The notes below the pieces were generated by a model. The model had not been told where the DNA came from, searched no databases, and saw only the letters and a list, made by a program, of their open reading frames with translations. Made by a program: the position numbers and the translations under genes. From positions 47,554,001-47,618,000 of the forward strand of contig NC_134474.1 of NCBI RefSeq assembly GCF_964194025.1: a DNA stretch of 64,000 nucleotides. The letters run 5' to 3'. The stretch comes from Convolutriloba macropyga (lineage: Eukaryota). Positions 11,504-34,603 of the stretch are shown here, one piece after another (position 1 is the first letter of the stretch; each line of letters starts with the position of its first letter).

Positions 11504-12460
11504 CACACACAGGCGCACACACACGCAAACTTGTACACACACACGCACACTTACACTCACACACAGACACCCACACACACGTACGCACACGCACACACAC
11601 GTNNNNNNNNNNNNNNNNNNNNNNNNNNNNNNNNNNNNNNNNNNNNNNNNNNNNNNNNNNNNNNNNNNNNNNNNNNNNNNNNNNNNNNNNNNNNNNNNNN
11701 NNNNNNNNNNNNNNNNNNNNNNNNNNNNNNNNNNNNNNNNNNNNNNNNNNNNNNNNNNNNNNNNNNNNNNNNNNNNNNNNNNNNNNNNNNNNNNNNNNNN
11801 NNNNNNNNNNNNNNNNNNNNNNNNNNNNNNNNNNNNNNNNNNNNNNNNNNNNNNNNNNNNNNNNNNNNNNNNNNNNNNNNNNNNNNNNNNNNNNNNNNNN
11901 NNNNNNNNNNNNNNNNNNNNNNNNNNNNNNNNNNNNNNNNNNNNNNNNNNNNNNNNNNNNNNNNNNNNNNNNNNNNNNNNNNNNNNNNNNNNNNNNNNNN
12001 NNNNNNNNNNNNNNNNNNNNNNNNNNNNNNNACACTTACANNNNNNNNNNNNNNNNNNNNNNNNNNNNNNNNNNNNNNNNNNNNNNNNNNNNNNNNNNNN
12101 NNNNNNNNNNNNNNNNNNNNNNNNNNNNNNNNNNNNNNNNNNNNNNNNNNNNNNNNNNNNNNNNNNNNNNNNNNNNNNNNNNNNNNNNNNNNNNNNNNNN
12201 NNNNNNNNNNNNNNNNNNNNNNNNNNNNNNNNNNNNNNNNNNNNNNNNNNNNNNNNNNNNNNNNNNNNNNNNNNNNNNNNNNNNNNNNNNNNNNNNNNNN
12301 NNNNNNNNNNNNNNNNNNNNNNNNNNNNNNNNNNNNNNNNNNNNNNNNNNNNNNNNNNNNNNNNNNNNNNNNNNNNNNNNNNNNNNNNNNNNNNNNACCA
12401 CACATACCGCACACACACCACATACCACACACACAACACACACCACACACACACCACACA
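11504..12460. repeat. CA-rich simple repeat region interrupted by N runs
   Basis: Degenerate (CA)n sequence flanking three N blocks. Confidence 0.8.
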
Positions 12461-13553: not shown

Positions 13554-15232
13554 GCGAAAAATAATTGATTTACAGATGTACATGACTTTTATGTCTGTTA
13601 ATGTGACTAATTATACGTGGCATTGCTGGATAGTTGTTATTGGACACTTTTTGTCATGTACATTTGTAACTTAAGTTCATTTGTCAACTGCTTTTCGACA
13701 CTCGGCTAGCGGCCTCGTTTCAAAATGTTAATAAGTCGATCCATCAAGGAGCAATCTAATATAAACTTGGTTTACCGGTGTAGGTAATTTTTGCGCACGT
13801 AAGTCTGTAAAAGTATACGAAATCACAAAGGAAAATCACGCACGCCTGTAAATTAAGGTACTACTAGACTACAACCGTTATTTGTGTTTTGTAGCGTACC
13901 GGCCTCGTTTTAATTAATCAATAGCTCGATACAAAGCAGTGGCCCAATATATACGGAGATTTTGAAAACTGAACTTTGAGCAAGTTCTCTTATCTCTCAA
14001 ACCAAAATTTCCTATTTTATTAAAACTTACACACGATTTAGATGCTACAAAACATTGTGAAGAATATATTTTGTTAGTTTTCATTGCTTAGAAAATTTAA
14101 CAATATCTGTTGCATTTTCCCCGTGATTTACGCAGTATTAACTAGTAGTTTGGTTAAAAGCCGTTGTTCAAGGTTATAGTCAAGGATCTCAAGGATCTTC
14201 TAACTTCTTTCAATGAGTGAAAGATGTTAATTTCGTTCAAAAACCCCTCAAAATTTGAACTGGTCAAAGATTAGTTGTTACTGCCCTTGTATGTATTCTT
14301 CTTTAAAAATAGATATCTATTTTTTGGAGGACTACAAATGTTGCGGTCATAGAACATATTGACATTTAATCAGACCATCTTCAAGCGCACATGAGGAAGA
14401 AATTTCCCCTTAAAATTACAAAATCTAATTATCCTTTTAAAACCACGAAAGTCTGATCACTGGTCTGAGTTGAGTCTTATCAGAGGTGGTTTGAAACAAA
14501 CGAAATTTTGATCAGAAACCATTTCGACTACACAAAAGCCCTGGAATGGCCTGTATTGAGTCTGATCAGATATTGTTTTGGTACGGGTTTTTCAACTGAT
14601 TTTTTATTGTAATTACTTGATTAAACACTCATTGGTTTTGCTGAGAGCCAACAATACTGTTGTATTCCTATCAAAGACCCATTAGGAGTAAGGTGGCCAA
14701 GATCAAAACCAAATAATCTAGTAGTTATAAAGACCACTCTGCAGATCATGGCGATTCTTATGAAAATTTTTCCACGTTCAGCTATGGAGCAAGCAATTTG
14801 ATGTTTATTGCAAAAAAATCATGTGTTCAAACAATGCTCTTTTTCAATTTAATTGCAAAGAATTTTATCTTTATTGACTGGATGTTTTGCTGCTTTATTG
14901 AGATGTTTTGCTGCGTGAAAGTCATTCAATGTTCCACGCAAGTTTCTGATCAGATGATTTTGATTGCAACTGGGTCTGATAAGAGACCTTTTCGAGCACA
15001 CGTGCATTAGAGCGCAGAAACTCTAGGTTAAGTCTGGACAATAATCTCACAACAATTTTAATAAACGCCGCGCTTGAGTCTGATCAATCAAGGCTTCTCT
15101 CATGATTGTTAGGCTCTTTATCCCAGGCTTTGGTCCAGACCCAAATTGAGCTATGATCAAACCCAATCGAGCGCACACCCCTGTGTTCCCAGAACGAAAT
15201 TACAGGGTCTGGAAAGCGGTTCGAGCGCACAA

Positions 15233-15412
15233 TAGTCTGGACCATGGTCTGATTTCGGTCTGATCAGAGGTCAATTCGGTCTGGACGGTCTGATCATAGT
15301 CTTTTTAGTCTGGACCATGGTCTGGGTTCGGTCTGATCAGAGGTCAATTCGGTCTGGAAGGTCTGATCATAGACTTTTTAGTCTGGACCATGGTCTGGGT
15401 TCGGTCTGATCA
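15233..15412 (+). repeat. 73-bp tandem repeat (~2.5 copies) rich in gtctgatca/gtctgga motifs
   Basis: tagtctggaccatggtctg recurs at 15233, 15306 and 15379. Confidence 0.85.
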
Positions 15413-16304
15413 GGGGACGTTTCGAGCGCATTTGAGTCTCAAAAAACTCTTCATCAACTTAGTCACCATTGCTAAGTCACTATAGACTTAGTATTAACAG
15501 AATGAACTGTCAAAACAATCATCAAAATATTTTTGCGGAAAAATTATTTCAAATACGTTTCGACGGTAAAGTTTAGATAAAATTTGTGTTTAAGCTCGAG
15601 AAAAAATCTTTCTAGGGCAACAAAATCAACTATCTAAGGCAACAATAATCAAAAACATCAACTTAGTTCTCGTTAGATTGTAAAAAAACGGAAAATATTG
15701 AAATTTTGCATAAAAAAAACTTTTTGCATAAACAAAAGACATTTTTTTGGCAATTTTCACATTCTGACGGAATTTTTACAAAAATGGTTGTTGTTGCAGT
15801 TGGTACTTTCCCGGCAAGTATAAAAACTCCTCAAAAACGAAAGTATTGCATATCTACAACACCTAGAAGAAAGGAAGACTTTTGCAAGAAATTTTATATA
15901 CATTTTCTTTTGCATTGAATTATAAAAGAAGTTTCCAGTTACCACAGAAAACTTTGCACCAAATTTTCAAGAAAGTATTGGAAAAACAAAAAAAAATTAT
16001 GAAAATTACAGTATCTTTTTTCTGATTTTTTCAGCCCTCTATATTAAGTCAGATAAAAATATTTTGTATTGTAGTAACTTAAAAAATTGCAATTAAAGAG
16101 AGGACTGTTTAACAATTCTCTAATTTTTTTTTCAACACAACAAACAAAAAATTGTGATTGTGGTCACTTAGCTTAACTTAATCATGAATTGAACAAAACT
16201 GAATTTCATGAACTTCAATCCTTCGAACAAAATTTTGCCTTTATCAGACAATTTTTGAATATGCGGAACATGTTCAAAGGTTGGCATTCGTCATTTGGTC
16301 AATG

Positions 16305-16560
16305 ATGGACTGGAAGGTCTGATCATAGACTTTTTTTAGTCTGGACAGTGGTCTGAATTTGGGTCTGATCATAGGCGCACTATACTCTGGACAAAGGTCT
16401 GGGTTCGGTCTGATCAGAGGACATTTTGGTCTTGAAAGTCTGATCAGAGATCATTTTGGTCTGGAAGGTCTGATCAGAGGTAATTTCAGTCTGGAAAGTC
16501 TGATCAGAGGTCATTTCAGTCTGGATAGTCTTATCATAGCTCAATTTGGCTCTGGACCAA
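16305..16560 (+). repeat. 30-bp tandem repeat of the same gtctgatcag family
   Basis: gtctgatcagaggtcattttggtctggaa-like unit repeated about five times. Confidence 0.8.
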
Positions 16561-18702
16561 AACCTGGGAAGTCTAGTCTAGCGAATTCTAGCTCTCTATG
16601 TTTAAACTAACCTATCTCAAGCCCTTGTCATTTTGCGAGCATTTCTTTCAACGTTGCTTGATTATGTTTTGTTTGATCATTTGAGCTTCTAAAATGCGCA
16701 AAACTGTTTAAAAAAGTTGGAGGAAGGTAAGAACTGAGCTGGATGAAACCCTGAGCTGGCTGAAAACAAAAATTAAAAAAATATATATACAAAAAATAGC
16801 AAAATAGCTTTAAAAATTTTTCCTCCGAAAAAAATGGCAATTAAAAAAACGAATTTTATTTCAGTTGACAAGCTGTTAAATAGAAGTTGTTGTGATTACA
16901 GCTACACTACCTAGCTGTGCGCTCTTATACATACAATCTTGTCTCTGTATGAAAGTACAATTTAGCAGACGGGGCACAAATTTGAAAATTTTTAATTTTT
17001 ATGCCAACAATAATTTTCCATTTTGAACAATCACTAATTCCTAATTGAAAATAAAAAACTAAGCAAATAAAATCAAAAGCAAGTGAAAAATAACTTTCAA
17101 AAAATACTAAAAAAATTCTTTACATTGAAAAAAAGGAAAAAGAATTGGATGAATTTTACATCCTGTTTTTTAGGAAACATAAAACCCCGTTTTTTTGGCT
17201 GCGGAACGATGCTCGCTGATTCTTCAAAGTAATGATTTTATGTCAAGAATAATTTTCTCATATCATAGAACAAGCTGTATAATTTGATCAACTTTCTAAA
17301 AAAGAAAATTAATAAACTTTACTTTTGTATTCGAAATTTTGCTGCTCTACTAATTGGTAGGTACTATTTTTTTTCGTTTTTAAGGACGTTAACGAATTTA
17401 TATAGGAGTTGCGACTGTTACCACGCAGAGGTTCGTTCGGTTAACAAAATTTAATAAGGTGAGTTAAATGAGCAAACAGATTTTGCATACTTTGATTCTT
17501 TGCTTTTTATACGACTTTAGACAAGCAAACACCAAAATTTTCAATCTAAACGACAAACGTTTAAATCTAGTCAACACTTGGACTAGATAATTGCATTTTG
17601 ACTTGGTGGACAACATCAAATTATTCCATGACAACATAAAAATTGATCTACAACTCATTTTATATCAATCTCAATTGAAAAGTATCTCATTTGAACAAAA
17701 CTAGTAAAAAATTATAATCGGTATCTTGCCCATCAATATGGAAAAAACCCTAAAAAATTTAACTGACTGACGTAATTAGGTTTATTCTAAAAATAATGTC
17801 TGAAAATTTGCTGCAAAGAATTGAATCGCGAGGAAAAGAAATGAGGTTTATGTTTTCCGTAAATTAAAAAACAGAAAAAGTTGCTCGCCTATTTGTTCAA
17901 AAAAACATCCCTGTTTGAGAATTTTCATGAATTTTTCAATGGAAAGCCTGAAATAACTCTAACAAATGAGCGCAAATAGTTTTACTGCTAGCTCAGCTCA
18001 TTATTTATTGAAGAAAGATGCGCCTCATTTTCAGTTTTCGAATAATTCAGCAAGCTGTACTTCTTTTCAGCTCCACTTCAGCTCTTCCCCACAACACTGT
18101 CAACACTAATTCAACGCTTTCCATGATTTTGTTCTGCTCTGAGTTGGTATTTCCCTCAATTTCAAACAAAATGGGTCGTAAAAAATGTGGATGGTTCTTA
18201 AAAAAATGTTGAAATGTTGAGCGCACATAAAAGTGGCTGGGAAATGCTAGTTTAATGGGAAAAGTTAAACTAGTGTTTGAATAATTTTGGAGAAAATGCT
18301 GAATTACCGCTGAAAAAAGATTGTGGATTTGTTGAACTTTTGAAAAATTTACGGAAAAGCACTTAATTTTTAATGATTTTTAAAAACAATTCACAGCCCC
18401 TTTTGCTGTTTTCAGCCTCATTAAGCGCACTTTTCCCCCGCAAAAAAGTGCGTACTTCTTGCCGAAACCTGATCTCAGGGCTGTCCCGTTTGGTCTCACC
18501 AGGTTGTTTGGGGTACTCTCGATAAACGACTAAGAAAAATGGTCAGAACTTAAATTCTTTTTGCCATCATCCGTCTTCGAAAAAACTACCCTGAATTCAA
18601 ACTGTATATCAAGAACTCATAAAATTACATTTCATGATCAATAACTTGTGTATCTGTGTACAAAAATAATCTGCGCCTGAGTTGGAAATTTGTGTCCACA
18701 AT

Positions 18703-19013
18703 TCATTTACTACAAATTATGAACCCTCGGTACGTGTCAACAGATCTATCCACTGTGTTCATGGCTGCACACATGTCACTGGCTTGGTACCAGGCATGTT
18801 TCATGAACTGGGATGGATCCAGAACCAGAATCATGTCCAGACCCTGATGGTACGCAGCTGCGACACTGTGGTGTCCGCTCTCTATGCAACACATGTGTAG
18901 CTTGGGTACCCAGTAATTGAGAAGCATGGCCTGGGGTTGCTGTCGGCTTTGACAACCTGAGTCTGAGCAGCATGTTAGAATGACTTGGTTGCGAAGGGTG
19001 TCCAGGTTGGCTT
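18703..19013 (-). CDS. PCS: Phytochelatin synthase-like protein (peptidase C83), exon 3, with catalytic His and Asp
   Basis: atttcag acceptor, phase 1. EANLDTLRNQV..MLLNYW..SGHHSVAAAYHQGLDMILVLDP..W..DMCAAMNTVDRSVDTYRGFIICSK* aligns with the PCS consensus GH(F/I)SP..AY....D..LILDV..W....LW.AM.TVD.....RGF. Confidence 0.88.
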
Positions 19014-19431
19014 CTGAAATTGAGATTTTTTTCGTTAACTTGCCTCCTGTCAGGTCAACTCTAATTTATTACTGTCCATTCAAAATTTTCAGGAATAATT
19101 TTCATTAGGTCGGTGCGTGTGCGTTAATGGCGAGACCACTATAAATGCTCAACGGTTAAAGTGTGTTGGATGAGCTGCACAGTTAAAATCTGTCTATGGT
19201 TTGATTATTTATGAGCCAATGTGATCGTTAGTGAGCTATGGTCTGATCATTAAGGAGAGCTGCTCGGAAGAATCTCGAGAGCAAAAATCGCTGCAAAAAA
19301 AAGAAAAAGCTTAATCGCCAAAACAACACAGACACCCACCCACCCACCCACAAACACACACACACACACGCAAACATGAACAAAAATAAACACATATGCA
19401 CACATAAACACAATAAACAACAACAACCCAC

Positions 19432-19509
19432 AGAACAACAGAACAGAACAGAACAGAACAGAACAGAACAGAACAGAACAGAACAGAACAGAACAGAACA
19501 GAACAGAAC
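19432..19509 (+). repeat. (GAACA)n pentanucleotide microsatellite abutting the PCS exon 2 donor
   Basis: About 14 tandem gaaca units. Confidence 0.95.
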
Positions 19510-19513
19510 TAAC

Positions 19514-19669
19514 CTTGCATGTGGTATGTAGTAGTGTTAGCACCATAGTGGTCAACGACCCTGCTGAGTGTGGTGAGGGGTATGCCTTTGCCCTCTACAC
19601 TCCCACTCGCGTACACACACTCAGAGAGACTCCTGTCTCCCAGCAGATCACAGTCACGAACTGTCCTAT
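19514..19669 (-). CDS. PCS: Phytochelatin synthase-like protein, exon 2 (absent from the ORF track)
   Basis: ttttag acceptor and caag|gttagt donor; 156 nt, phase 1 to phase 1, no stops. DRTVRDCDLLGDRSLSECVYASGSVEGKGIPLTTLSRVVDHYGANTTTYHMQ resembles the PCS segment V.EKGI.....LA...GA.V..F. Confidence 0.82.
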
Positions 19670-19866
19670 CTAAAACACTCAAAACGTATACTGTTAGAAG
19701 GCTGAGAGAGAGAGAACAACCTAATGTAAATTGTGCATAAGATAAGCTTCACGTAGCTTGACAAGAAGCTCTACTTGTTCAGCGTATACTTGGCTATAAA
19801 AATGAAGCCTTGAGGAACAAGAACGTGGGAACGGGTTATAAGAGTTGACCAAGTTTCAGAGCTTAC

Positions 19867-19939
19867 GACCAGTTGGTGTAAATGGGTAGCACAATAGGCT
19901 TGCAAGAAAGAGAAGCTGGTTCGAATCCAGCACTGGTCT
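19867..19939 (+). pseudogene. tRNA-like sequence (Ala-TGC-like); pseudo-tRNA or tRNA-derived SINE head
   Basis: Acceptor stem GACCAGT/ACTGGTC, D-stem GTGT/GCAC, T-arm GCTGG-TTCGAAT-CCAGC, loop CT-TGC-AA, but the anticodon stem (ATAGG vs GAAAG) cannot pair. Confidence 0.7.
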
Positions 19940-21872
19940 ATTTCACAGTAGTTGCACCTGCATATACCCTCTAACATTTTGCTGCTCTGGATCCGTGAAA
20001 GCTGCATCGGTCATTCGGCAATTTGTTCTAAGTTCCTGTAAGTTGCGGACAAAAAATTTTTATCGAGAAAGATTGTACTAGAGATTAAATTAACAATTAA
20101 TTACACAGTAGGAATGATTCCTATTTCGTGTTCAAAAGTCATTTCCTTTAATTCTTATAAATTTTAATTAAGTTTCTCTAGTTTTTTTTTTAAAATGCTT
20201 TCCATAAGATCTGATATGACACTACCGAGATTTTACAACATCATTCAGGACCTTCGAGACAAATTGTTTGTCCTGAAAGATTAACTTTTTAAGACTTTAT
20301 AAGACAATTTTATGACCAGAGAAAATATGGCTTCTTATAACATAGCCAGTGGGGCATCATTTACATTTTCATTAAAACTTTTGGTAAAAATGTCAACAAA
20401 TGTCACCTTAGAATTGACACTTGTAAAATGTTGTGTTCAAATGCTTGAGTTTATTCTTTTTGCGGTGCTGTAGGAATTAAAAAAAGATTTTTGGACTGCA
20501 AAACGATGTCAGTAAGAAGAACTTCTAAGATCTTAAACTTAAGTGCAACGATATTTGGAAAAAAAATCGCTCAAGAAAAAAGAAATAGTTAATGTAATTT
20601 TCAATCAGCTTTATATAGACATATGACGTCTGACGAAGTGTCGCCATATCTTACGAGATAAAAGTTTCTTAAGGCAGAATTATACAATGCATATTTTTTT
20701 ATTGTTTGAGATCTGATGAAATGTCTGACAGGGTGTTAGACAGGCAATGCGTAATGTGATAAATGCTGATAAAAATGTGCAACAGTTGCATGATCTTACA
20801 GGAAGAATATCATCAAGATACTGAGACAGCAAGCATTCCTTAATAAATAGAACTTAAATTAGCTACATTTCTGATAAGCATGTTTAAACTATTTTTCGAC
20901 ATATTCAATTCATCCATCGACTTTAAAGTAGCACAAAACAAAACTGATTTCAAAGAGTCCTTTTAAAATTTTACAAGCTGCATTTAATCTAATAAATTTT
21001 CAATTTTTGACGTTTTGTAGTGTAAGACGTGAAAGCACACCATACACGGGCAAGAACTGGTAAAATTTTGTTTCAAATGTTAGTGAGGTAGGTTAAGTAC
21101 AATTGCACAGGTACTTATTTCTTCAGCTCACGAGGTTAGGGCTGAAGATTTCTTTCATCTTTCAACTCAATTTTCGTCTTTCTCAGAATTTAGTTCAAGA
21201 TTACAAGATGTCGCAACCGCAGTGGATGGACCTGTACTGGATATTAACAAGAATATCTTAATTGCAAGCCGAATGTGCCAGCCATTACAATAATTGGTCT
21301 TAAAAGCTTTCAAACTCAAGTGTCTCTTACTCTTACAACCTATTTTTTTTGTTTCCTCAAGACCTGCCAAGGTTTACTTTTGAACAAGTCCAACTATTTG
21401 CAGTCATTTCAAAATTATGAGTATTTTCAAATTGATGTGTTACTCCGTTTTTCAGAGTGACTTTGTTAATTAATTACAGTCAGTTATACGAGCGTGACCA
21501 ATTTGTTGAATAATCATTGTAGTTAAAGTTTACAATCTCCAGTTTCAAACAAGAGCTCAGCTCCTTTCGAAAGATTGACGTCGGGGAGGTCCAATCAAAG
21601 TTTGTCTTTTCATTTTTGTACATGAGGACTTTTGCCTAGTCCGCAAACCCTGAAACTAAAATCTTATTTTTTGCATTTTTTAACAAACCGACATTTGCTT
21701 AGATAAATTGTTTTCCACCTGATCAATTTAGTGCTGATGACATGAAAGCCTTCCAACTATATTAAAAATTTAAACGCCGTTTTAGAATTGAAAAATTATT
21801 GTAAGCTCAACTAAAACTTAGTTGCTCTGGTTTGTTGTTGGTGTTGTATTTTTTTTAATCTTTCCACAGTAC

Positions 21873-22077
21873 CTGTGATTTGGAGTGCAGATAGAACACA
21901 AGCAGCAGCAGCATATCCACAGTAGCAGTACCCTATCTGTTTGTGGAAATGAGGCCACAGTTCGTTAAACTGGCTAGTCCCACTCTCTTCCGCCTCAGCC
22001 AACATCTGCTGGCCTCTCTCGCTCTCCAGAAGAACCCAGGGCTGTTGCTTCTTATCTTGGTTATTACAACCAGGCAT
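21873..22077 (-). CDS. PCS: Phytochelatin synthase-like protein, exon 1 (proximal copy), with oxyanion Gln47 and catalytic Cys53
   Basis: LESERGQQMLAEA..FHKQIGYCYCGYAAAACVLSAL matches PCS S.EG...L.EA..F.TQ....(F/Y)CG.A....VLNAL. cag|gtactg donor. Spliced CDS is 205+156+311 = 672 nt = 223 aa plus stop. Confidence 0.88.
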
Positions 22078-22158
22078 AGTTAGTAATAGTTATAATAAAT
22101 ATAAGTTGTCAACTCTTCTGCTGTCTTAAAGGTACGAGTGATTGACAAATAATGAAGA

Positions 22159-22191
22159 AGTTTTATACGTACGCTGTCTTTGATTAGTCAA
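22159..22191 (-). promoter_or_regulatory. Putative TATA-containing core promoter of the PCS-like gene (second copy ~25423-25455)
   Basis: Minus strand TTGACTAATCAAAGACAGCGTACGTATAAAACT about 85 nt upstream of the ATG. Confidence 0.45.
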
Positions 22192-23868
22192 ATTTAGTTG
22201 GATATAAAAGTTTTAACTTTCTGTTCAATATACCAAAAAAGCAAACCGAGCTTTTGTTTTGTTCTTGAATCAAATGACCACCTAAGTCTGTTCAAAAAAT
22301 GTTTCCTGTGACGAAAAACAAATTATGAAGGTCAGAAACTACACTTTGTTAGCTCGGTTGGTATAAATAAATCTTTAGAGTATAATGTTCGAATTAATTT
22401 TAAATTAAACATGATATCAGATATAAGTTGTCATACAATACAACAGGCGTTTAGTTATCGGCTTAAACTTGTTTGCAACTCAACAGGTAATCCAAATTAT
22501 TAATACGTTTGCGTAAATTTTTCTAATAGAAAGAACGTACTTAGTGCGAAACGCATTTTGTGTTAATACACGCCAAAAGTAAGAACACAAATTTGATCAA
22601 ATTCATAAACCGCGATTTGGTTTTGTGGAATTACAGGTCTAATAAAACAAGTCAAGCTGAAAATCTTTGCAAATACAAAATGCAAATTTCTTAAAATAGA
22701 AGAGTGCTCCAAATATTTGAGAGCGTGACGCTCGATTTTGGAGCAAGTCAAGCGTCAAACACTGGAACACATTTAGCCGTCCAAGGACTCTCAAGCAGGG
22801 AATCGCCTTTTTCCATGTTTTGCCATTCACTTATGGTCACTATAGTGCAAATAATTCCTCAGTTATGCAAAGCCGTTATAATTGAACGCAACATAAGTTA
22901 AAGTCTTGTAGCGTGCACATTGGGTGAAAATATTCATCCAAATGCACGCAATGTAAGTGAAAATTAGAGTTACTATCTTTCCTCTCCCTTCATGTCATAA
23001 ACCAATGACACACGCCTTAAGCCGGTAATAAAATGCACAATAACCGATTTGCATAATCACCCAAAGAAAACGTCCCGACAAAAACGATCTGAAAATTGAA
23101 TTTGGCAGTGTCCTGGTTAATTTTATCATTTTTGTTCACAAATTTGACTGACTGGAAAAGTTCATGACATAATTGAATTCAAAATCTTTTTTATTGCCAA
23201 AAGTTCTCATGTTGAATGTACTGAATTATTATAATCTTCGCATAATTTTCACATCAATCAACAAAGGTATGTGGCGTTTGTTTACCTATGTTCCGATCCT
23301 CTTTTATCCTCGTTTTTGACACAACTTATCGCCAAACAGAGCACTGATTATCATATCGTAAAGCGTTAGTTATTTGATTGAGCTTTAAAGTTTGATTGGG
23401 TTCCCAATTACGGATCTTCGAGGTCAACAACCGATCTAATATAAATTCTCGTAGCGTGAGAATAGGAAAAATCTTCAAAATATGATAAAAAAAATAGACA
23501 AATAATTGACTGAAAAAACTTGAAATTTACTTAAACATTAATCTCATGAAAATTCCATAGCCAAATACCATGTATTGTCCTGAAATTACCAAGAAATCAA
23601 ATGAGTTTTTACCACTCAAGTGCATTTCTTAACAGACTAACATTTTATCATTCTTTCTGATTATAAATGTACATTCTCCCACAATTTTGGTGCTTTTGAA
23701 AAAAAAATTGACAAAAACTGTGCCGACTACTGTGTTTAGCATTTATTGTAGATAAATGTCGTAAATAATCCCTAAAAAAATTATCTTAGCTATATTGTAC
23801 ACAAGAGAAAAATTGTTTAATTGACCAAATAAGTCAGCGACCTATATAAGTGATTGATGAAACAGAGG

Positions 23869-24967
23869 CACACATTAGCGATATATATCAACGAATGATT
23901 ATACAGTAAACCTACGTTACCAACATACGTCCGCAAATGTCGATGCAGCATCACACATTAGTGGCATTCATCAGCAAATTCTGATAGAGCAGCATACATT
24001 AGCTACATGTACCGGCAAGTGTTGACACAATATCACACTTTAGCGGCATTTATCAGAAAATTTTGATACAGCATCACATATTAGCGAATTGAAACAGCAA
24101 ATGTAGATTTAACCCGATACATTAGCGTTTTTCATCAGCAAAAGTTGATACCGCGTCATAAATTAGCGATAGACATCAGCAATTGTTAACACACGTCAAC
24201 GACAGCGGTTTTCATCAGCAAATGTTGATACATCAACATACATTTGCAATATTCATCCGCAAATGTTGACAAAGCATAACACTTTAGCGGCATGCATCAG
24301 CAAAAGTTAATACAGCATCATTCTTCAGTGAAAAACATCAACAAATGTTAACACACGTCAACATCAGCAGCTATCATCAGCAATTCTTGATACAGCAGCA
24401 TACATTAGCTATTAATATCATATATCCGCAAGTGTTGACACAGGATCACCCTTTAGCGGCATTTATAAGAAAATTTTGATACAACATCACACTTTAGCGA
24501 ATTGAATCAGCAATTGTAGATTTAGCCGAATACATTAGCGGTATTCATCAGCAAATGTTGATAACGCGTCATAAATGAGCGACAGACTTCAGCAAATGTT
24601 AACAAACATCAAAGTCAGCGGCTTTCATCAGCGAATGTTGATACATCAACATATAATAGCAACACACATCCGCAAATGTTGATACAGCATAGCATATTAG
24701 CGGCATTCATTAGCGAATTCTAATACAGCATCATTCTTTAGCAACAAACATCAGCCAAGTTTAACACACGCCAAAATCACAGGCTTCCATCAGTGAATGT
24801 TGATACCTCAACATACATTAGCAGCATACATCCGCAAATGTTGACAAAGCATAACACATTAGAAGCAAGCATCAGCAAACGTTAATACAGCATCATTCTT
24901 TAGCGACAAAAATCAGCAAATTTTAACAAACGCCAACATCAGCGGCTTTCATCAGCAAATGTTGATA
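23869..24967 (+). repeat. ~41-bp satellite, partial array copied by the duplication
   Basis: catcagcaaatgttgatacagcagcatacattagcgacata-like monomers. Confidence 0.92.
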
Positions 24968-25136
24968 AATTGTTTTCCACCTGATCAATTTAGTGCTGAT
25001 GACATGAAAGCCTTCCAACTATATTAAAAATTTAAACGCCGTTTTAGAATTGAAAAATTATTGTAAGCTCAATTAAAACTTAGTTGCTCTGGTTTGTTGT
25101 TGGTGTTGTATTTTTTTTTTAATCTTTCCACAGTAC

Positions 25137-25341
25137 CTGTGATTTGGAGTGCCGATAGAACACAAGCAGCAGCAGCATATCCACAGTAGCAGTACCCTAT
25201 CTGTTTGTGGAAATGAGGCCACATTTCGTTAAACTGGCTAGTCCCACTCTCTTCCGCCTCAGCCAACATCTGCTGGCCTCTCTCGCTCTCCAGAAGAACC
25301 CAGGACTGTTGCTTCTTATCTTGGTTATTACAACCAGGCAT
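25137..25341 (-). CDS. PCS: Duplicated PCS exon 1 (distal copy; potential alternative first exon, P13S and L40M)
   Basis: Near-identical to 21873-22077 with ATG, donor site and upstream TATA region intact; no dedicated downstream exons of its own. Confidence 0.65.
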
Positions 25342-27132
25342 AGTTAGTAATAGTTATAATAAATATAAGTTGTCAACTCTTCTGCTGTCTTAAAGGTACG
25401 AGTGATTGACAAATAATGAAGAAGTTTTATACGTACGCTGTCTTTGATTAGTCAAATTTAGTTGGATATAAAAGTTTTAACTTTCTGTTCAATATACCGA
25501 AAAAGCAAACCGAGCTTTTGTTTTGTTCTTGAATCAAATGACCACCTAAGTCTGTTCAAAAAATGTTTCCTGTGACGAAAAACAAATTATGAAGGTCAGA
25601 AACTACAATTTGTTAGCTCGGTTGGTATAAATAAATCTTTAGAGTATAATGTTCGAATTAATTTTAAATTAAACATGATATCTGATATAAGTTGTCATAC
25701 AATACAACAGGCGTTTAGTTATCGGCTTAAACTTGTTTGCAACTCAACAGGTAATCCAAATTATTAATACGTTTGCGTAAATTTTTCTAATAGAAAGAAC
25801 GTACTTAGTGCGAAACGCATTTTGTGTTAATACACGCCAAAAGTAAGAACACAAATTTGATCAAATTCATAAACCGCGATTTGGTTTTGTGGAATTACAG
25901 GTCTAATAAAACAAGTCAAGCTGAAAATCTTTGCAAATACAAAATGCAAATTTCTTAAAATAGAAGAGTGCTCCAAATATTTGAGAGCGTGACGCTCGAT
26001 TTTGGAGCAAGTCAAGCGTCAAACACTGGAACACATTTAGCCGTCCAAGGACTCTCAAGCAGGGAATCGCCTTTTTCCATGTTTTGCCATTCACTTATGG
26101 TCACTATAGTGCAAATAATTCCTCAGTTATGCAAAGCCGTTATAATTGAACGCAACATAAGTTAAAGTCTTGTAGCGTGCACATTGGGTGAAAATATTCA
26201 TCCAAATGCACGCAATGTAAGTGAAAATTAGAGTTACTATCTTTCCTCTCCCTTCATGTCATAAACCAATGACACACGCCTTAAGCCGGTAATAAAATGC
26301 ACAATAACCGATTTGCATAATCACCCAAAGAAAACGTCCCGACAAAAACGATCTGAAAATTGAATTTGGCAGTGTCCTGGTTAATTTTATCATTTTTGTT
26401 CACAAATTTGACTGACTGGAAAAGTTCATGACATAATTGAATTCAAAATCTTTTTTATTGCCAAAAGTTCTCATGTTGAATGTACTGAATTATTATAATC
26501 TTCGCATAATTTTCACATCAATCAACAAAGGTATGTGGCGTTTGTTTACCTATGTTCCGATCCTCTTTTATCCTCGTTTTTGACACAACTTATCGCCAAA
26601 CAGAGCACTGATTGTCATATCGTAAAGCGTTAGTTATTTGATTGAGCTTTAAAGTTTGATTGGGTTCCCAATTACGGATCTTCGAGGTCAACAACCGATC
26701 TAATATAAATTCTCGTAGCGTGCGAATAGGAAAAATCTTCAAAATATGATAAAAAAAATAGACAAATAATTGACTGAAAAAACTTGAAATTTACTTAAAC
26801 ATTAATCTCATGAAAATTCCATAGCCAAATACCATGTATTGTCCTGAAATTACCAAGAAATCAAATGAGTTTTTACCACTCAAGTGCATTTCTTAACAGA
26901 CTAACATTTTATCATTCTTTCTGATTATAAATGTACATTCTCCCACAATTTTGGTGCTTTTGAAAAAAAAATTGACAAAAACTGTGCCGACTACTGTGTT
27001 TAGCATTTATTGTAGATAAATGTCGTAAATAATCCCTAAAAAAATTATCTTAGCTATATTGTACACAAGAGAAAAATTGTTTAATTGACCAAATAAGTCA
27101 GCGACCTATATAAGTGATTGATGAAACAGAGG

Positions 27133-30100
27133 CACACATTAGCGATATATATCAACGAATGATTATACAGTAAACCTACGTTACCAACATACGTCCGCAA
27201 ATGTCGATGCAGCATCACACATTAGTGGCATTCATCAGCAAATTCTGATAGAGCAGCATACATTAGCTACATGTACCGGCAAGTGTTGACACAATATCAC
27301 ACTTTAGCGGCATTTATCAGAAAATTTTGATACAGCATCACATATTAGCGAATTGAAACAGCAAATGTAGATTTAACCCGATACATTAGCGTTTTTCATC
27401 AGCAAAAGTTGATACCGCGTCATAAATTAGCGATAGACATCAGCAATTGTTAACACACGTCAACGACAGCGCCTTTCATCAGCAAATGTTGATACATCAA
27501 CATACATTTGCAACATTCATCCGCAAATGTTGACAAAGCATAACACTTTAGCGGCATGCATCAGCAAAGGTTAATACAGCATCATTCTTCAGTGAAAAAC
27601 ATCAACAAATGTTAACACACGTCAACATCAGCAGCTATCATCAGCAATTCTTGATACAGCAGCATACATTAGCTATTAATATCATATATCCGCAAGTGTT
27701 GACACAGGATCACCCTTTAGCGGCATTTATAAGAAAATTTTGATACAACATCACACTTTAGCGAATTGAATCAGCAAATGTAGATTTAGCCGAATACATT
27801 AGTGGTATTCATCAGCAAATGTTGATAACGCGTCATAAATGAGCGACAGACTTCAGCAAATGTTAACAAACATCAAAGTCAGCGGCTTTCATCAGCGAAT
27901 GTTGATACATCAACATATAATAGCAACACACATCCGCAAATGTTGATACAGCATAGCATATTAGCGGCATTCATTAGCGAATTCTAATACAGCATCATTC
28001 TTTAGCAACAAACATCAGCCAAGTTTAACACACGCCAAAATCACAGGCTTCCATCAGTGAATGTTGATACCTCAACATACATTAGCAGCATACATCCGCA
28101 AATGTTGACAAAGCATAACACATTAGAAGCAAGCATCAGCAAACGTTAATACAGCATCATTCTTTAGCGACAAAAATCAGCAAATTTTAACAAACGCCAA
28201 CATCAGCGGCTTTCATCAGCACATGTTGATACAGCAGGAAACATTAACGACATACATCCGAAAATCTGGACAAAATATCACACATTAGCGGCATTTATCA
28301 GAGAATTGTGATACAGGATCACACAATAGCGAATCAGCAAATGTAGATTTAGTCGAATACAATAGCGGTATTAATCAGCAATTGTTGACGCAAAATCATA
28401 ATATAGTAACAGACATCAAAAAATGTTAACACACGTCAACATCGGCGGCTTTTATCAGTGAATGTTTATACAACAACATAAACTACCGACATACATCCGC
28501 AAGTGTTGACAAAGCATTGCATATTAGCGGCATTCATCATGAACACTAATACAGCACCATTCTTTAGCAACAAACATCAGCAGGTGTTAACACAGTTCAA
28601 CATCAGGGGTTTTCAGCAGCGAATACAACAACATACATTAGCAACAAACATCCTCACGTGTTGACAAAGCATAACACATTAGCGGCATGCATCAGCATTG
28701 GTTAATACGGCATCGTTTGACGTATTTGATAGAGCATCACACATTAGCGAATTGAATCAGCAAAAGTAGATTTAGTCGAATACAATAGCGGTATTCATCA
28801 GCAATTGTTGATGCAGAATCATAATTTAGCAACAGACATTAAAAAATGCTAACACACGTCAACATCAGCGGCTTTCATCAGCAATTGGTGATTCAGCAGC
28901 ATTCATTAGCGACATACATCGGCAAGTGTCGAAACAGTATCGCACAATAGCGGCACTTATCAGAGAAAATCGATACAGCATCAGACATTAGCAAATCGAA
29001 TCAATAAATGTTGGTTTATCCGAATACATTCAGCGGTTGTCATCAGCAATTGTTGATACAGAATCATAATTTGGAGACAGTCTGCAGAAAATGTTAACAC
29101 ACGTCAAAGTCAGCGGTTTTCATTATCAAATATTGATACATCAACATAAGTTAGCAATATACATCCGTAAATGTTGACAAAGCATAACACATTAGCGGCA
29201 TGCATCAGCAAATGTTAATACAGCATCAATCTTTAACGAAAATCATCAGCAAATGTTAACAAACGTCAACAATCAGCGGCTTTCATCAGCAAATGCTAAT
29301 ACAGCAGCATACATTAGCAACATACATTCGCAAGTGTTGACACAATATCACACAATAGCAACGTTTATCAGAGAATTTTGATACAGCATCACACATTAGC
29401 GAATTGAATCAGTAAATGTAGATTTAGCCGGATACATTATCGGTACTCTTCAGCAAATGTTGATACCGCGTCATAAATTAGCTACAGACATCAGCAAACG
29501 TTAACACTCGTCAACATTAGCGGCATTCATCAGCAAACGCTGATACAGCAGCATGAGTTTGAGACATGTATCCGCATGTGTTGACACAATATCACAAATT
29601 AGCGCATTGAATCAGCAAATGTAGATTTAGCCGAATACATTAGCAGTATTCATCAGCAAATATTGATACAGCATCATAAATCAGCGAAATATGTCAGCAG
29701 ATGTTAAAACACGTCAACATCAGCCGCTTTCGTCCGCGAATTTGATACATCAACATCCATTAGCAACATACATCCACAAATGTTGACAAAGCATAACACA
29801 TTAGCGGTTTGCACTAGCAAAGTTTCATGCAGCATCATTCTCTAGCAACAAATATCAGCAAATATTAACACACGCCAACATCAGCGGCTATGAATCAGCA
29901 ATTCTTGATACAGCAGCATACATTAGCTATATATATCATATATCCGCAAGTGTTGACACAGGATCACACTTTAGCGGCATTTATAAGAAAATTTTGATAT
30001 AACATCACACTTTAGCGAATTGAATCAGCAAATGTAGATTTAGCCAAATACATTAGCGGTATTCATCAGCAAATGTTGATAACGCGTCATAAATGAGCGA

Positions 30101-31280
30101 CAGACTTCAGCAAATGTTAACAAACGTCAAAGTCAGCGGCTTTCATCAACAAATGTTGATACATCAACAAAAATTAGCGATATACATCCGTAATTGGTGA
30201 CAAAGCATAACCCATCAGTGGCATTCATCAGCGAATGTTAATACAGCATCATTCTTTAGCGACAAAGATCAGCAAATGTTAACCCACGTCAACATCAGCT
30301 GCCTTCATCAGAAAATTTTGATACAGCAGCAGCAAACATTAGCTATATATATCAAATGTGGGCAAGTGTTGACACAAGATCACACTTTAGCGGTATTTAT
30401 CAGAGACTTTTTATACAGAATCACACTTTAGCGAATTGAATCAGCAAATGTAGATTTAGCCGAATACATTAGCGGTATTCATCAGCATTTGTCGATGCAG
30501 AATCATAATTGAGCGACAGACATCAGAAAATTTTAACACACGTCAACATCAGCGGCTTTCATCATCAAATCCTGATACATCAACATAAATTAGCGACGTA
30601 CATCCGCAAATGTAGATTCAGCATAACACATTGGAGGCATGCATCAGCAAATGTTAATACAGCATAATGCTTTATTGAAAAACATCAGCAAATGTTAACA
30701 CGTCAACATCAGCGGCTTTCATCAGCAAATGTTGATACAGCAGCATACACTAGCGACATACATCCGCAAGTATTGACACAATATCACACAATAGGGGCAT
30801 TAATCAAAGTATATAGATACAGCATCATACCTTAGCGACATGAATCAGTAAGTCTAGATACAGCAGCATCCATTAGCGACATTCATCAGCGAATGTTGAT
30901 ACAGCAGCATACGTAAGTGACATACAACATCAAATGTTAACACATGTAAACATTAGCGACATTCATCAGCGAATAATTATACAGCTTCATTCGTTAACGA
31001 CATTATTCAACGAATAATGATAAAGCATCACACCTTATCAAAATACATCAGCGAACACTGATGGAGCATCATATTTTTGCGACGTACATCAGCAAATGTT
31101 GATACACCAGCATACAATAGCGACATACATCAGCGAATATTTAAACAACAGCATACAATGGCGGCATACATCTGCGAATGTTGATACAGTAGCAGGCAAT
31201 AGCGTCATACGTCAGCGAAGGTTGTTACAGCCTCATACATTACAACATATGCTAGCGAATGTTGATACAGCATTAGCTGT
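27133..31280 (+). repeat. ~41-bp satellite array (~4.1 kb) with ~414-bp higher-order periodicity
   Basis: Diagnostic monomer tgtagatttagccgaatac recurs ~414-416 bp apart (27366/27780, 29620/30033/30449); monomer variants appear in an ordered series. Confidence 0.92.
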
Positions 31281-32415
31281 ATTTCAATATTTTACCACTC
31301 ATTGTTAAAAAGTTTTACGGTGCCAGTTGTTACTCAGGAATATACTTTTTTGTACTTTATTTGAAAAACTGAGAATATTTCAAGCTTATCTTGAAAGAGA
31401 TTCACGATTAAATACTAAATGCTGACATTCGGTTGACCAGAGAACCGTTTGACCAAAGAAAAGTTTTTTGTTGACCAAAGAAAAGTTTTACTCAGATCGT
31501 CAACTATGAAAACTGTGAAAGTAACCTGTACCACACATTTGTTAAACTTTTTGACTTTAAAAAATGTTATTATTGTGATATTGAGCTTGCTTTCGAAAAT
31601 GTAAAATGGACTATTGTTGTTGCAATCAAGAGATACACTTCAAAAACCTTTAACCACAAAAGTGGAGGAATGTGAAGTTCAATTCTCCTCGTTGACAGGG
31701 TGATCCGCCGACAAGTAATAAATGAGAATTTCAGCCCACAAATTTATCATAACTAGACAAAAAATTCCATTGGTCGATAAATCAGTTGTTCGATAGACCA
31801 TTATCTTTTGATATGCGGTCGGGTGGCGCTCCACTTGGCTTCTCTGTGGCCGTTCTCCTTGGTTTCTAAGGGTGCAATCACCGATAGAAGTTCGTTTCGT
31901 TACAAAATTTGAAATTAACCGTGCAGTATATTTGTTCTCTTACAAAATATCCTTTTAAGTTTGCCGATCACAGCTTCAGATTAACTTATCTACTTTCTCA
32001 TTTTTCGTGACTTGTCGGTTGAATTTTCTTTTTTTTATTTGTTGGCTATATGTCCTATCGGCCAAACGTCTTCCACTTTTTTAAATATCGGTCTCCAAAA
32101 CTATCTTCCTAAGCTTATTCACTGGAACGCTGTAAATTTTTGTCAACATATATAAATGAAGCGGAATCGTTATTGTTGCTGTGAATTATTGTCTTTTATA
32201 AACATTGTGGTCAGCTTAAAGAATATTTAAAAATATTTGTTTAATTTTTGTCCGCTATGTACCTTGATGAAAATGTATTCCTTATCATTTCAAATAAAAA
32301 TGCTCTCCTAATGGGAAGCTCCATAAGAAACGATTCAAACTACAACATTCTGTTGCTCTGTTTATCGGCCATAAGTATAGGTTTTTAAAGTCGTTTTGAG
32401 TCTAGCTCAACTTGA

Positions 32416-33393
32416 TCACGCATCTCTTGGGGTCAATTTCACATTGAAATTACGAGGTGACACTCCGACGAACCCAACCACAGGTGTCAAAGAGGGTTTC
32501 TCATCTCCAACAGCTTCTATTTTGTACTTCCTCACTATGGAAGCGAATGCCGAGAATACTTCCATCTTAGCAAACCCCTCCCCAAGACAAGATCTAGCAC
32601 CCATTGAAAAGGGGATAAGACAAGGATGTCGCTGAAACTTTCCGGACTCATCCAAGAAATTTCCTGGATCGAAGGATCCGGCATTCTTCCATCGCTTTTC
32701 GTCCCTGTAAAGGCACACTAGGTTAGGTATCATTCTAGTGCCTTTCGGGATGCGATAGCCGTGGAAATTTTCTATATCCTCATCTGCGGTGTGATCAATT
32801 GTTGAATAGAGCATAGGATAAACGCGCATAGTTTCATTAATAACTGCCAATGTATAGTCACAGTTACTCTGGACTGATAATGGAACAATTGGACTTTCAA
32901 GGTCAATTTTTGGTTTCAGCTCCTGATAAACATTTTCCTGAATGTCTGGGTAATGAATCATAACTAATACAAGCCAAGAGAGGGTATTAGTTGTTGTTTC
33001 CTGGCCTCCTAATATCAGGTCAACAAGGACACCGTGGGCACCTTTCTCATTGATTGTTGGATCGTTTTCGATCAAAATTTTGTCCCAGATATAATCAGAC
33101 ACACATTCCGGTTCTCGATTTCTGGCGTCTTGAGTTGAGTTTGGCTTTGTCTCTAGGAAATAGCCCATAACTTTGTGTTCGAATTGGGCTCTCAATGAAA
33201 GGAGTTCTTTCCCGATTGGCATGTGACGAGCAATGCACGTCGGAAGAATCCAGTGAATGCCCGTAGGATTCTGCAGTTCGGCTGTCCTGGCTAAGAAGTA
33301 GAAAGTTTCCAGATACTTTGGATCATTGTAGTCAAAAGTCTTATTGAAGACCATTTTGTACATCACGTTGTTTGTCATGTAACCTGCCAGTTG
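32416..33393 (-). CDS. Cytochrome P450 A (CYP2-like, clan 2), exon 2
   Basis: tttttag acceptor, phase 0 (QLAGYMTNN). I-helix GGQETT, K-helix ETMR, meander FDPGNF, heme motif FSMGARSCLGE. Confidence 0.95.
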   Translation of the reverse strand, partial: QLAGYMTNNVMYKMVFNKTFDYNDPKYLETFYFLARTAELQNPTGIHWILPTCIARHMPIGKELLSLRAQFEHKVMGYFLETKPNSTQDARNREPECVSDYIWDKILIENDPTINEKGAHGVLVDLILGGQETTTNTLSWLVLVMIHYPDIQENVYQELKPKIDLESPIVPLSVQSNCDYTLAVINETMRVYPMLYSTIDHTADEDIENFHGYRIPKGTRMIPNLVCLYRDEKRWKNAGSFDPGNFLDESGKFQRHPCLIPFSMGARSCLGEGFAKMEVFSAFASIVRKYKIEAVGDEKPSLTPVVGFVGVSPRNFNVKLTPRDA

Positions 33394-34603
33394 CTAAAAA
33401 GTGAACATTTAACTGTAAGAACAATTATGCTGGTTATATGGAAAATTTTCAAACAATATTTTTAATTCTTTTTCAATTTTAATGTCATTTAAAAGGCAAG
33501 AGCGAATTTTGGTTAGTGTTCTTGTTTACTATCCAAATAAAACATTGTTGATGATTCAAATAATTATTGCGGACACCTAGCAGAATGTGAAAAATCCCAG
33601 CGCCAAAAATCATATTTGCAGAATTAAGCGGTTTATAAAATCGATCTAATAATTAAAAATAATCTTTTTCCAGAAAAAGTACCCAAACAGTTTTAAAATT
33701 TTGTTGAGGCGACTCCAAATGTGTTTTTTATGAGTCTGCTCAGTCTTAAACCAAAATTACGTACCAAATTGTTGGATGGAAAATGGTTAGGTTAATCGTG
33801 GAACTAAGGGATCGAAAAAACATGATTTTCGTCATTCGTATTCACGGACAAACGTAATAAAAACCCACGACTTTGAGCATTCAATCGGGCTAAAATTTTA
33901 TAAACTGACTTAGTTACTATTATCTTAGTAACTACTTCAGACCCAGTTCAGAGACTTAATTGTTCCTGTGTGCAGTGATATGGGAAAATGTAAAACTGTT
34001 AATTATCTTTTAAATCCTCAATTAGCATTGCAAGGGACTTTTCTGAAATTTATCACTAATAAGGTTTCTTTCATTTTCGTGTAATTACCAAGATGCTAAT
34101 TATCTTGGTTAGAAACCGAGGGTGGCAATGATGGCATGGAATTTTGTGACGAGGAGTGGGATCTTTAAGCATGGTCATAAAAAATAGCAACAAACACTCG
34201 TGAGAAATTACTTTTAAAAAATGATATTTGCCACTTGATGAAAATAATTTAAAAAGAATTGAGTCCAGATTGCTATTGCTTGTCCTCTATGGGTTGCAAG
34301 AGCCGCCGGCATTAGCTAAATAAGAAACGTTGAATATTGAACAACAAAAAATGAATCTAATCCTCTTTGATCCAAACTATTTAGCAACAAGTAGAATCTG
34401 CAAGTGTAAACGTCCACATTAGCAAATAAAGCAGCTGTTATCAGACTTAAGGATTTACCATTTGTGTTAAACGATCAACATCATATGTTCCCAGATCTAA
34501 CTGGACGAATTGGCATTGACTTTGTTTGCAATCTGGTGCTCAAATTGTTTATTGTTTTTTTTTTGTTTTTCCATATAATGTCCTATCTCATACGCCCCAC
34601 TTC

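What the first reader, a model, noticed from the sequence alone, without database searches (positions are those of the whole stretch)
21702..28231. Tandem duplication gives the PCS-like gene two promoters and two catalytic-Cys first exons
Seen: the 3.26-kb duplication copies the promoter region, exon 1 and its donor site, but not exons 2-3. The distal exon 1 differs at three sites that I found: P13S, L40M and one silent change. Inference: a transcript from the distal promoter could splice 25137 to 19669, skipping the proximal first exon. That would raise dosage and give two N-terminal isoforms from one gene body, i.e. an alternative first exon at birth.
Basis: partly seen in the sequence, partly recalled or inferred. 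Interest (0 to 1): 0.7.

Follow-up and report, generated by a model that had tools for sequence, protein, structure and literature searches.

The report
Young tandem duplicate of first exon
An acoel worm's small phytochelatin-synthase-like gene carries a recent 3.26-kb tandem copy of its promoter and first coding exon; this is an ordinary young structural variant that could become an alternative first exon, but nothing reachable here shows the spare copy is used.

Summary
Window 21702-24967 and 24964-28231 are direct tandem copies, 99.45% identical, with 16 substitutions and one 2-bp indel. Each carries 2.9 kb of 5' flank including a TATA box, the 205-nt first coding exon with its GT donor, and 171 nt of intron 1. 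Exons 2 and 3 are single. P13S, L40M and a silent S63 change are confirmed.

The genome is Convolutriloba macropyga. RefSeq XP_075249739.1 (223 aa) matches my three-exon model and uses the proximal exon; its name carries no isoform label.

The duplication is very probably real:
- It lies inside one gap-free stretch.
- The junction has a 4-bp GATA microhomology.
- The copies differ about 7-fold less than the genome-wide heterozygosity.
- A third exon-1 sequence (S13/L40) sits on another public contig.

Both amino-acid changes lie outside the catalytic residues, so any second isoform would probably be almost the same enzyme.

Earlier notes of this scan list several other duplicated first exons elsewhere in this genome, so I read it as a new member of a known kind, of low to moderate interest.

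The parts
21702..24963 (.). Proximal duplication unit (copy A): 171 nt of intron 1, exon 1, and 2886 bp of 5' flank, of which the last ~1.1 kb is minisatellite
24964..28231 (.). Distal duplication unit (copy B), 99.45% identical to copy A
24964..24967 (.). Duplication junction. The 4-bp microhomology GATA is shared by the left breakpoint (21702-21705, in intron 1) and the right breakpoint (28228-28231, in the minisatellite).
   Evidence: the BLAST alignment ends overlap by 4 bases
21873..22077 (-). Proximal exon 1 (205 nt, phase 1; P13, L40, Gln47, catalytic Cys53). This is the exon used by RefSeq XP_075249739.1.
25137..25341 (-). Distal exon 1 (S13, M40, silent S63 TCG). The ATG, open frame and GT donor are intact; PF05023 scores 33.5 bits.
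22161..22167 (-). TATAAAA box 90 nt upstream of the proximal ATG. The sequence from the ATG to -157 is identical in both copies.
25425..25431 (-). Copy of the TATAAAA box, 90 nt upstream of the distal ATG
19514..19669 (-). Exon 2 (156 nt), single copy. Its acceptor AG is at 19671-19670.
18703..19013 (-). Exon 3 with the TGA stop (His168, Asp186), single copy
23870..24967 (.). 41-bp-unit minisatellite forming the upstream end of copy A
27151..31273 (.). The same minisatellite in copy B, continuing past the right breakpoint at 28231. It was found only at this locus in the genome.

Best explanation
This is a real, young, 3,264-bp direct tandem duplication in the genome of the acoel Convolutriloba macropyga. 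It was most likely made by one microhomology-mediated joining event (template switch or end joining at GATA). That event joined a point 171 nt into intron 1 of a three-exon, 223-aa phytochelatin-synthase-like gene to a point 2.9 kb upstream, inside a 41-bp minisatellite. The result is a partial gene duplicate: a spare core promoter plus first coding exon lying 3.26 kb upstream of the complete gene. It is an ordinary structural variant, probably carried by only one of the two haplotypes. The proximal exon is the one in the public gene model. The spare exon is intact and could be spliced to exon 2, but this is not shown. If used, it would probably give practically the same enzyme, because S13 lies in the unaligned N-terminal tail and M40 is a conservative change of a helix Leu. 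Shown: the duplication, its junction, the intactness of both copies, the gene model and the third allele. Inferred: the formation mechanism, haplotype specificity, and the lack of a functional effect.
For: The unit is unique in the assembly. There is no N run between 12396 and 45385, and both exon-1 ORFs are recorded on a public contig of the same length, 145,930 bp. The junction shares only GATA between otherwise unrelated sequences. An overlap assembler cannot invent such a join, and scaffolders join with Ns. Mean HiFi read length is 8.1 kb (66.51 Gb in 8.21 M reads), longer than the whole 6.5-kb block (PMC13650328). The copies differ by 0.49%, against a genome-wide heterozygosity of 3.65%. 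A third exon-1 sequence, P0004, has S13, L40 and no TT insertion. It sits on a different public contig of 295,234 bp that is not part of this primary assembly. Three distinct sequences from one diploid specimen need at least two copies on one haplotype. The gene model equals RefSeq XP_075249739.1 exon by exon and uses the proximal exon. The whole protein scores PF05023 at 104.9 bits, and the best solved relative is Nostoc Alr0975 at E 1e-13, with Cys, His and Asp aligned. L40 aligns with the Leu of FFPLSMQF in Alr0975, and residue 13 lies before the aligned core.
Against: No read-level check was possible, so neither junction-spanning reads, depth nor zygosity was seen directly. The library was PCR-amplified (ultra-low input), and the assembly is 36% larger than the k-mer estimate, so some artefacts exist in this assembly. 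I could not open the 295-kb contig. Its origin (alternate haplotype) and its copy number are therefore inferred. Neutrality is also an inference. Eight of the ten differences in the unique part of the unit cluster around exon 1 and the proximal promoter (post hoc scan P about 0.02). That clustering could reflect selection, gene conversion elsewhere in the unit, or pre-existing polymorphism.
Confidence: 0.65

Rival explanations
1. One reading: the distal promoter fires, its cap-proximal donor (25137) splices to the exon 2 acceptor (19669) over a 5,467-nt intron and skips the acceptor-less proximal exon. The gene would then already have two alternative first exons, giving P13/L40 and S13/M40 proteins and possibly more transcript.
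For: The core promoter, 5' UTR, ATG, reading frame and donor of the distal copy are intact and identical to the proximal copy from -157 to the donor. The distal copy keeps the native far-upstream context, since the minisatellite continues to 31273. The proximal exon has no acceptor of its own. From established knowledge, promoter choice determines which first-exon donor is used in the protocadherin and UGT1A variable-first-exon clusters. Each copy carries one private amino-acid change relative to the third allele.
Against: The only public full-length protein uses the proximal exon, and its name carries no isoform label. No S13/M40 full-length or partial protein is in the 90% cluster or in the word searches. 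Competing outcomes exist. A strong-looking cryptic acceptor at 22305 would lead into stop codons, and the proximal donor lies closer to exon 2. AATAAA and ATTAAA signals lie in the would-be intron. Even whole-gene tandem duplicates rarely show a dosage gain (PMC5460883).
Confidence: 0.25
2. Assembly artefact: two haplotypes, or a chimeric amplified molecule, were laid in tandem, and the animal has a single exon 1 per chromosome.
For: Heterozygosity is very high (3.65%). The assembly (1,176 Mb) exceeds the k-mer estimate (867 Mb). The HiFi library was PCR-amplified. One end of the unit lies in a minisatellite, a place where assemblers can err.
Against: There is no gap at or near the junction. 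The junction joins unrelated sequences through 4 bp only, which neither overlap assembly nor homology-driven PCR chimeras produce. The copies differ about 7-fold less than average haplotypes. Three different exon-1 sequences are deposited from one specimen. Mean reads are longer than the whole block. An earlier follow-up in this scan reported another young kb-scale tandem duplication in this genome as real (s1-208288; not checked by me).
Confidence: 0.08
3. The spare promoter is active but harmful or merely noisy. Its transcripts either read through the proximal promoter and dampen it, or end in non-productive RNAs: a 90-aa read-through ORF, or cryptic splicing with premature stops. That would make this haplotype a weaker allele.
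For: Without splicing, the distal ORF reads through the donor into a stop after 90 codons. The cryptic acceptor at 22305 gives stops. Interference between tandem promoters is established knowledge, for example at Drosophila Adh distal/proximal and yeast SRG1-SER3.
Against: There is no expression data at all. The donor is intact and cap-proximal, which favours normal splicing to exon 2.
Confidence: 0.1

Closest known systems
Partial tandem gene duplications segregating as structural variants (e.g. Drosophila yakuba/simulans surveys, PMC4069613 and PMC5460883)
   Same: This is a kb-scale direct tandem copy with one breakpoint inside a gene and one in flanking non-coding DNA. It is young and captures a 5' gene fragment with its promoter.
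   Different: Here it is in an acoel. The junction is resolved to a 4-bp microhomology, with one breakpoint in a locus-specific 41-bp minisatellite. Population frequency and expression are unknown.
Variable (alternative) first-exon genes such as the protocadherin and UGT1A clusters (own knowledge)
   Same: Several first exons, each with its own promoter and donor and no acceptor, lie upstream of shared downstream exons.
   Different: Those first exons are old, diverged, shown to be expressed, and encode functionally distinct domains. Here the copies are 99.4% identical and differ by two mild residues, and no transcript of the second exon is known.
Nostoc sp. PCC 7120 Alr0975 (NsPCS), a half-size phytochelatin-synthase-like papain-fold enzyme (PDB 2BTW, 6TH5)
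   Same: The gene product aligns over residues 19-223 at E about 1e-13, with Cys, His and Asp aligned. It has the same single-domain size and lacks the C-terminal domain of plant PCS.
   Different: The gene is animal, has three exons and sits on chromosome 7. No relatives of comparable length that share words with it turned up in the 5.8-billion protein set. Its activity is untested.
Other duplicated first exons noted by this scan in the same genome (s1-220380 copper transporter, s1-214652 7TM receptor, s1-224118 oxygenase)
   Same: A spare promoter plus first exon lies upstream of a complete gene. RNA proof is missing in each case.
   Different: By the wording of those notes, the receptor and oxygenase cases are old, conserved copies, while this one is only 0.5% diverged. 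I did not check those notes.

Membership tests
Tandem segmental (partial-gene) duplication | Two adjacent direct copies with no spacer and high identity over the whole unit | tested here: met
   21702-24967 against 24964-28231, 99.45% identity, head-to-tail
Tandem segmental (partial-gene) duplication | A novel junction joining the end of the unit to its start, with breakpoints definable in the single-copy flanks | tested here: met
   The junction at 24964 shares GATA between the 21702 and 28228 breakpoints, and the flanks are unrelated
Tandem segmental (partial-gene) duplication | Supported by sequencing molecules spanning the junction, with doubled depth relative to a single-copy model | not testable with these tools
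Alternative / variable first-exon gene | Two or more first exons, each with its own promoter and 5' splice site and no 3' splice site, upstream of shared exons | tested here: met
   Both copies have TATAAA at -90, an ATG, an open 68-codon frame and the donor ACAG|GT; exons 2 and 3 are single
Alternative / variable first-exon gene | Transcripts from each first exon joined to the shared second exon | not testable with these tools
   No RNA reads were reachable. The only public protein model uses the proximal exon, and no S13/M40 protein was found.
Phytochelatin synthase family (Pfam PF05023) | Match to the family profile above the curated cut-off | tested here: met
   P0003 scores 104.9 bits against a cut-off of 24.9, covering profile positions 10-210 of 210. 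Exon 1 alone scores 34.7 bits (proximal) and 33.5 bits (distal), and exon 3 scores 42.9 bits.
Phytochelatin synthase family (Pfam PF05023) | Catalytic Cys-His-Asp triad, plus the Gln six residues before the Cys | tested here: met
   Gln47, Cys53, His168 and Asp186 align with the corresponding Gln, Cys, His and Asp of Alr0975. Both exon-1 copies keep Gln47 and Cys53.
Phytochelatin synthase family (Pfam PF05023) | Gamma-glutamylcysteine transpeptidase or glutathione-hydrolysing activity | not testable with these tools
   This needs an enzyme assay
Haplotypic false duplication (assembly artefact) | Copies separated by or next to an assembly gap or contig end | tested here: not met
   The nearest N runs are at 12041-12396 and 45385-45570. 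Both ORFs are recorded on a public contig of the same length, 145,930 bp.
Haplotypic false duplication (assembly artefact) | Divergence between copies about equal to heterozygosity, and only two sequence types in the individual | tested here: not met
   0.49% against 3.65% genome-wide. A third exon-1 type, P0004, sits on another contig. That this contig comes from the same specimen is inferred.

The most novel reading that the evidence does not exclude
The duplication is a true alternative first exon caught at birth. Both promoters would be active in the animal and both first exons spliced to the single exon 2. The clustered differences around exon 1 and the promoter, one private amino-acid change per copy relative to the third allele, would then mark the first steps of regulatory or coding divergence. 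Together with the other duplicated first exons noted in this genome, that would point to first-exon duplication as a recurrent route to new isoforms in this largely clonal acoel.
Probability: 0.15. Interest if true: 0.5.

Novelty: new member of a known kind. Interest (0 to 1): 0.25.

Why it matters
If the spare exon is transcribed and spliced, this locus would be a clean natural example of the zero-time state of an alternative first exon. It would have identical promoters, a junction known to the base and only 17 differences. With the three sequenced alleles, one could ask whether expression is shared, doubled or interfered with. It sits in an enzyme family linked to metal and thiol handling, in a photosymbiotic worm that can be cultured. 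As it stands, it mainly documents that kb-scale, microhomology-mediated tandem duplications hitting 5' gene ends occur in Convolutriloba macropyga. It also warns annotators that the distal exon is not in the public model.

Tried and rejected
- **Contig look-up closed.** The 145,930-bp and 295,234-bp public contigs could therefore not be opened.
- **Alternate-haplotype copy number.** An exact look-up of ten other ORFs found none in the collection. These lay inside the unit, across the junction, across the left breakpoint and in intron 1, so this route gave nothing.
- **No outgroup.** Word searches with the full RefSeq protein and with the proximal exon-1 ORF found no relatives beyond the gene's own cluster. 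That leaves no outgroup to polarise P13S and L40M, and no second isoform.
- **Paralogue not usable.** The PF05023 locus on another chromosome (L007) has a different exon layout, with stops before its Cys motif. It could not serve as an outgroup for residues 13 and 40.
- **Exon enrichment not significant.** Three of 17 differences in 205 nt gives P about 0.06-0.09. I rejected this as evidence of selection.
- **Big protein search not used.** The search of protein representatives was left out because the family scans already place the protein and the claim does not rest on absence of relatives.
- **Joined model left out.** The spliced model was searched exon by exon by reference. The joined distal-exon (S13/M40) protein was not built for any search or look-up.
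- **Failed script check.** One script-local concatenation of the proximal exons, meant only to compare with the RefSeq protein, used a wrong exon-3 end and gave no match. It was replaced by an exon-by-exon check.
Full report
**Observation**

A self-comparison of window 15001-34000 gives one long direct match: 21702-24967 against 24964-28231. It has 3268 columns, 99.449% identity, 16 mismatches and one gap, and the repeat finder shows the same pair at a spacing of 3262-3264. The 17 differences are listed.

Both copies contain an ATG-initiated open frame on the minus strand. Read base by base, each has:
- a TATAAAA box 90 nt upstream of the ATG, at 22167 and 25431;
- 205 nt of coding sequence;
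- the same donor, ACAG|GTACTG, at 21873|21872 and 25137|25136.

The unit also copies 171 nt of intron 1 and 2886 bp of 5' flank. Exons 2 and 3 lie outside it. A six-frame scan of the whole assembly with PF05023 finds two exon-1 hits but one exon-3 hit on this chromosome.

**What the gene is**

An exact look-up of the two exon-1 ORFs placed them in one 90% cluster with RefSeq XP_075249739.1, 'uncharacterized protein LOC142342325 [Convolutriloba macropyga]', 223 aa (P0003).

Checked exon by exon:
- The proximal exon 1 translation is the exact prefix of that protein; the distal one is not.
- The exon 2 translation sits at residues 70-120 and the exon 3 translation at 122-223.
- The split codons give D69 and E121.

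The model is therefore 22077-21873, 19669-19514 and 19013-18703, and it is the public one. The whole protein matches Pfam Phytochelatin (PF05023) at 104.9 bits over profile positions 10-210. The best solved relative is the half-size Nostoc enzyme Alr0975 (2BTW, 6TH5) at E about 1e-13, with Gln47, Cys53, His168 and Asp186 aligned to its Gln, Cys, His and Asp. Calling it 'PCS-like' is justified. Word searches found no other relatives.

**The genome**

The genome note (PMC13650328) describes the data:
- one specimen, with a PCR-amplified ultra-low-input HiFi library;
- 66.51 Gb in 8.21 M reads, a mean of 8.1 kb;
- hifiasm --primary, purge_dups and YaHS;
- heterozygosity 3.65%;
- a k-mer size estimate of 867 Mb against a 1,176-Mb assembly;
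- a separately deposited alternate haplotype.

**Is the duplication real?**

The case therefore rests on indirect evidence, which points one way.

1. There is no N run between 12396 and 45385. Both ORFs are recorded on a public contig of the same length, 145,930 bp.
2. The junction joins the minisatellite (...CAGCAAATGTT) to intron sequence (GATAAATTGTTTTCC...). The two parental breakpoints share only GATA. An overlap assembler cannot make such a join without reads that contain it, scaffolders insert Ns, and PCR chimeras need homology.
3. The whole duplicated block is 6.5 kb, shorter than the mean read.
4. The copies differ by 0.49%, about one seventh of the genome-wide heterozygosity.
5. The cluster holds a third exon-1 ORF, P0004, on a different contig of 295,234 bp. 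It has S13 as in the distal copy, but L40 and no TT insertion in the A-run as in the proximal copy.

That contig is not in the primary assembly, because searches find only the two copies there. It is most simply the alternate haplotype of the same animal. Three distinct sequences in one diploid animal require two copies on at least one chromosome. Only one ORF type is recorded from that contig, which fits a single copy there and hence a heterozygous duplication. Two identical copies cannot be excluded. I put the duplication at about 0.9 real.

**How it arose**

The right breakpoint lies about 1.1 kb into a minisatellite with a 41-bp unit and higher-order periods of 82, 162, 245 and 413 bp. The array runs on to 31273 and was found only at this locus. 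The left breakpoint lies in unique intron sequence. With 4 bp of microhomology and no longer homology, the event looks like microhomology-mediated end joining or a replication template switch, not unequal crossing-over between repeats. This is an inference from the junction anatomy.

**The differences**

There are 10 differences in the 2168-bp unique part and 7 in the 1094-bp minisatellite part. Eight of the ten unique-part differences fall within 21811-22419, which covers the start of the intron, exon 1 and 340 bp upstream. A post hoc scan statistic gives P about 0.02, which is suggestive only. Enrichment in the exon itself is not significant (P 0.06-0.09).

Relative to the third allele (S13/L40), each copy has one private replacement: P13 in the proximal copy and M40 in the distal copy. 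L40 aligns with a Leu of Alr0975 (FFPLSMQF), so M40 is probably derived. Residue 13 lies before the aligned core. The distal exon scores 1.2 bits lower on the family profile. Neither change touches the aligned Gln or the Cys. No difference falls between the ATG and -157, so the core promoters are identical.

**What the spare copy would do**

A distal transcript would carry a cap-proximal donor at 25137. The proximal exon has no acceptor, so joining to 19669 over a 5,467-nt intron is the expected productive outcome by analogy with variable-first-exon genes (own knowledge).

It is not the only possible outcome:
- A strong-looking acceptor at 22305 would bring in stop codons.
- Unspliced read-through ends after 90 codons.
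- Two AATAAA and two ATTAAA signals lie in the would-be intron.
- Transcription through the proximal promoter could interfere with it.

On the evidence side, the public protein uses the proximal exon and its name carries no isoform label. No S13/M40 protein, whole or partial, is in the cluster or in the word searches. This is weak negative evidence, because near-identical exons are hard for annotation pipelines to separate. The dosage idea is not supported by the one systematic study I read, where tandem duplicates rarely changed expression (PMC5460883). I put productive distal-exon mRNA at about 0.25-0.3, and a selected two-isoform function lower.

**Comparison and novelty**

This is a partial tandem gene duplication of the kind common as standing variation (PMC4069613, PMC5460883), with the layout of a variable-first-exon gene but none of the divergence or expression evidence that defines those systems. 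Earlier notes of this scan list several other duplicated first exons and young tandem duplications in the same genome. I did not check them, and they are leads only. I file this as a new member of a known kind.

**Limits**

There is no read-level or RNA evidence. The second public contig could not be opened. No outgroup was found. The spliced model was searched exon by exon, and the joined distal-exon protein was not built for any search.

**Verdict**

Interest is 0.25.

Noticed in passing
window 23870-24967, 27151-31273: A 41-bp-unit minisatellite with higher-order periods of 82, 162, 245 and 413 bp. It would be about 4 kb long without the duplication, lies directly upstream of the gene, and was found only at this locus in the 1.18-Gb assembly.
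   Followed up: partly
window ~19437-19512 (minus strand): A (GTTCT)n microsatellite begins at the very GT donor of exon 2, so the 5' splice site of intron 2 is the first unit of the repeat. A GT/GTG-rich tract follows it.
   Followed up: no
window 21811-22419: Eight of the ten copy differences in the unique part of the unit cluster around exon 1 and the first 340 bp upstream (post hoc scan P about 0.02). The next ~930 bp upstream has none.
   Followed up: partly
window 22079-22085 and 22305 (minus strand): A perfect UACUAAC motif lies 8 nt upstream of the ATG. A strong-looking cryptic acceptor (TTGTTTTTCGTCACAG|G) lies upstream of the proximal TATA box. If a distal transcript used that acceptor it would run into stop codons.
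   Followed up: partly
L007 (G000:C5:67405154-67405747): A second PF05023 locus on another chromosome has a QPHCG Cys motif and a GH...LVLD exon (48.8 bits), with a different exon layout. No protein for it turned up in the word search.
   Followed up: partly
P0003 (whole gene, window 18703-22077): The 223-aa protein has no word-sharing relatives of 123-390 aa in the 5.8-billion protein set, even though Pfam and Nostoc Alr0975 matches are clear. This is an isolated, fast-diverged animal branch of the half-size PCS-like enzymes.
   Followed up: partly
window 2949-3218, 11332-12396, 45385-45570, 47837-47964: The six N runs have irregular lengths (128-429). This looks more like masking than fixed-size scaffold gaps, and fits a 145,930-bp public contig covering this region. 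They were left untouched.
   Followed up: no
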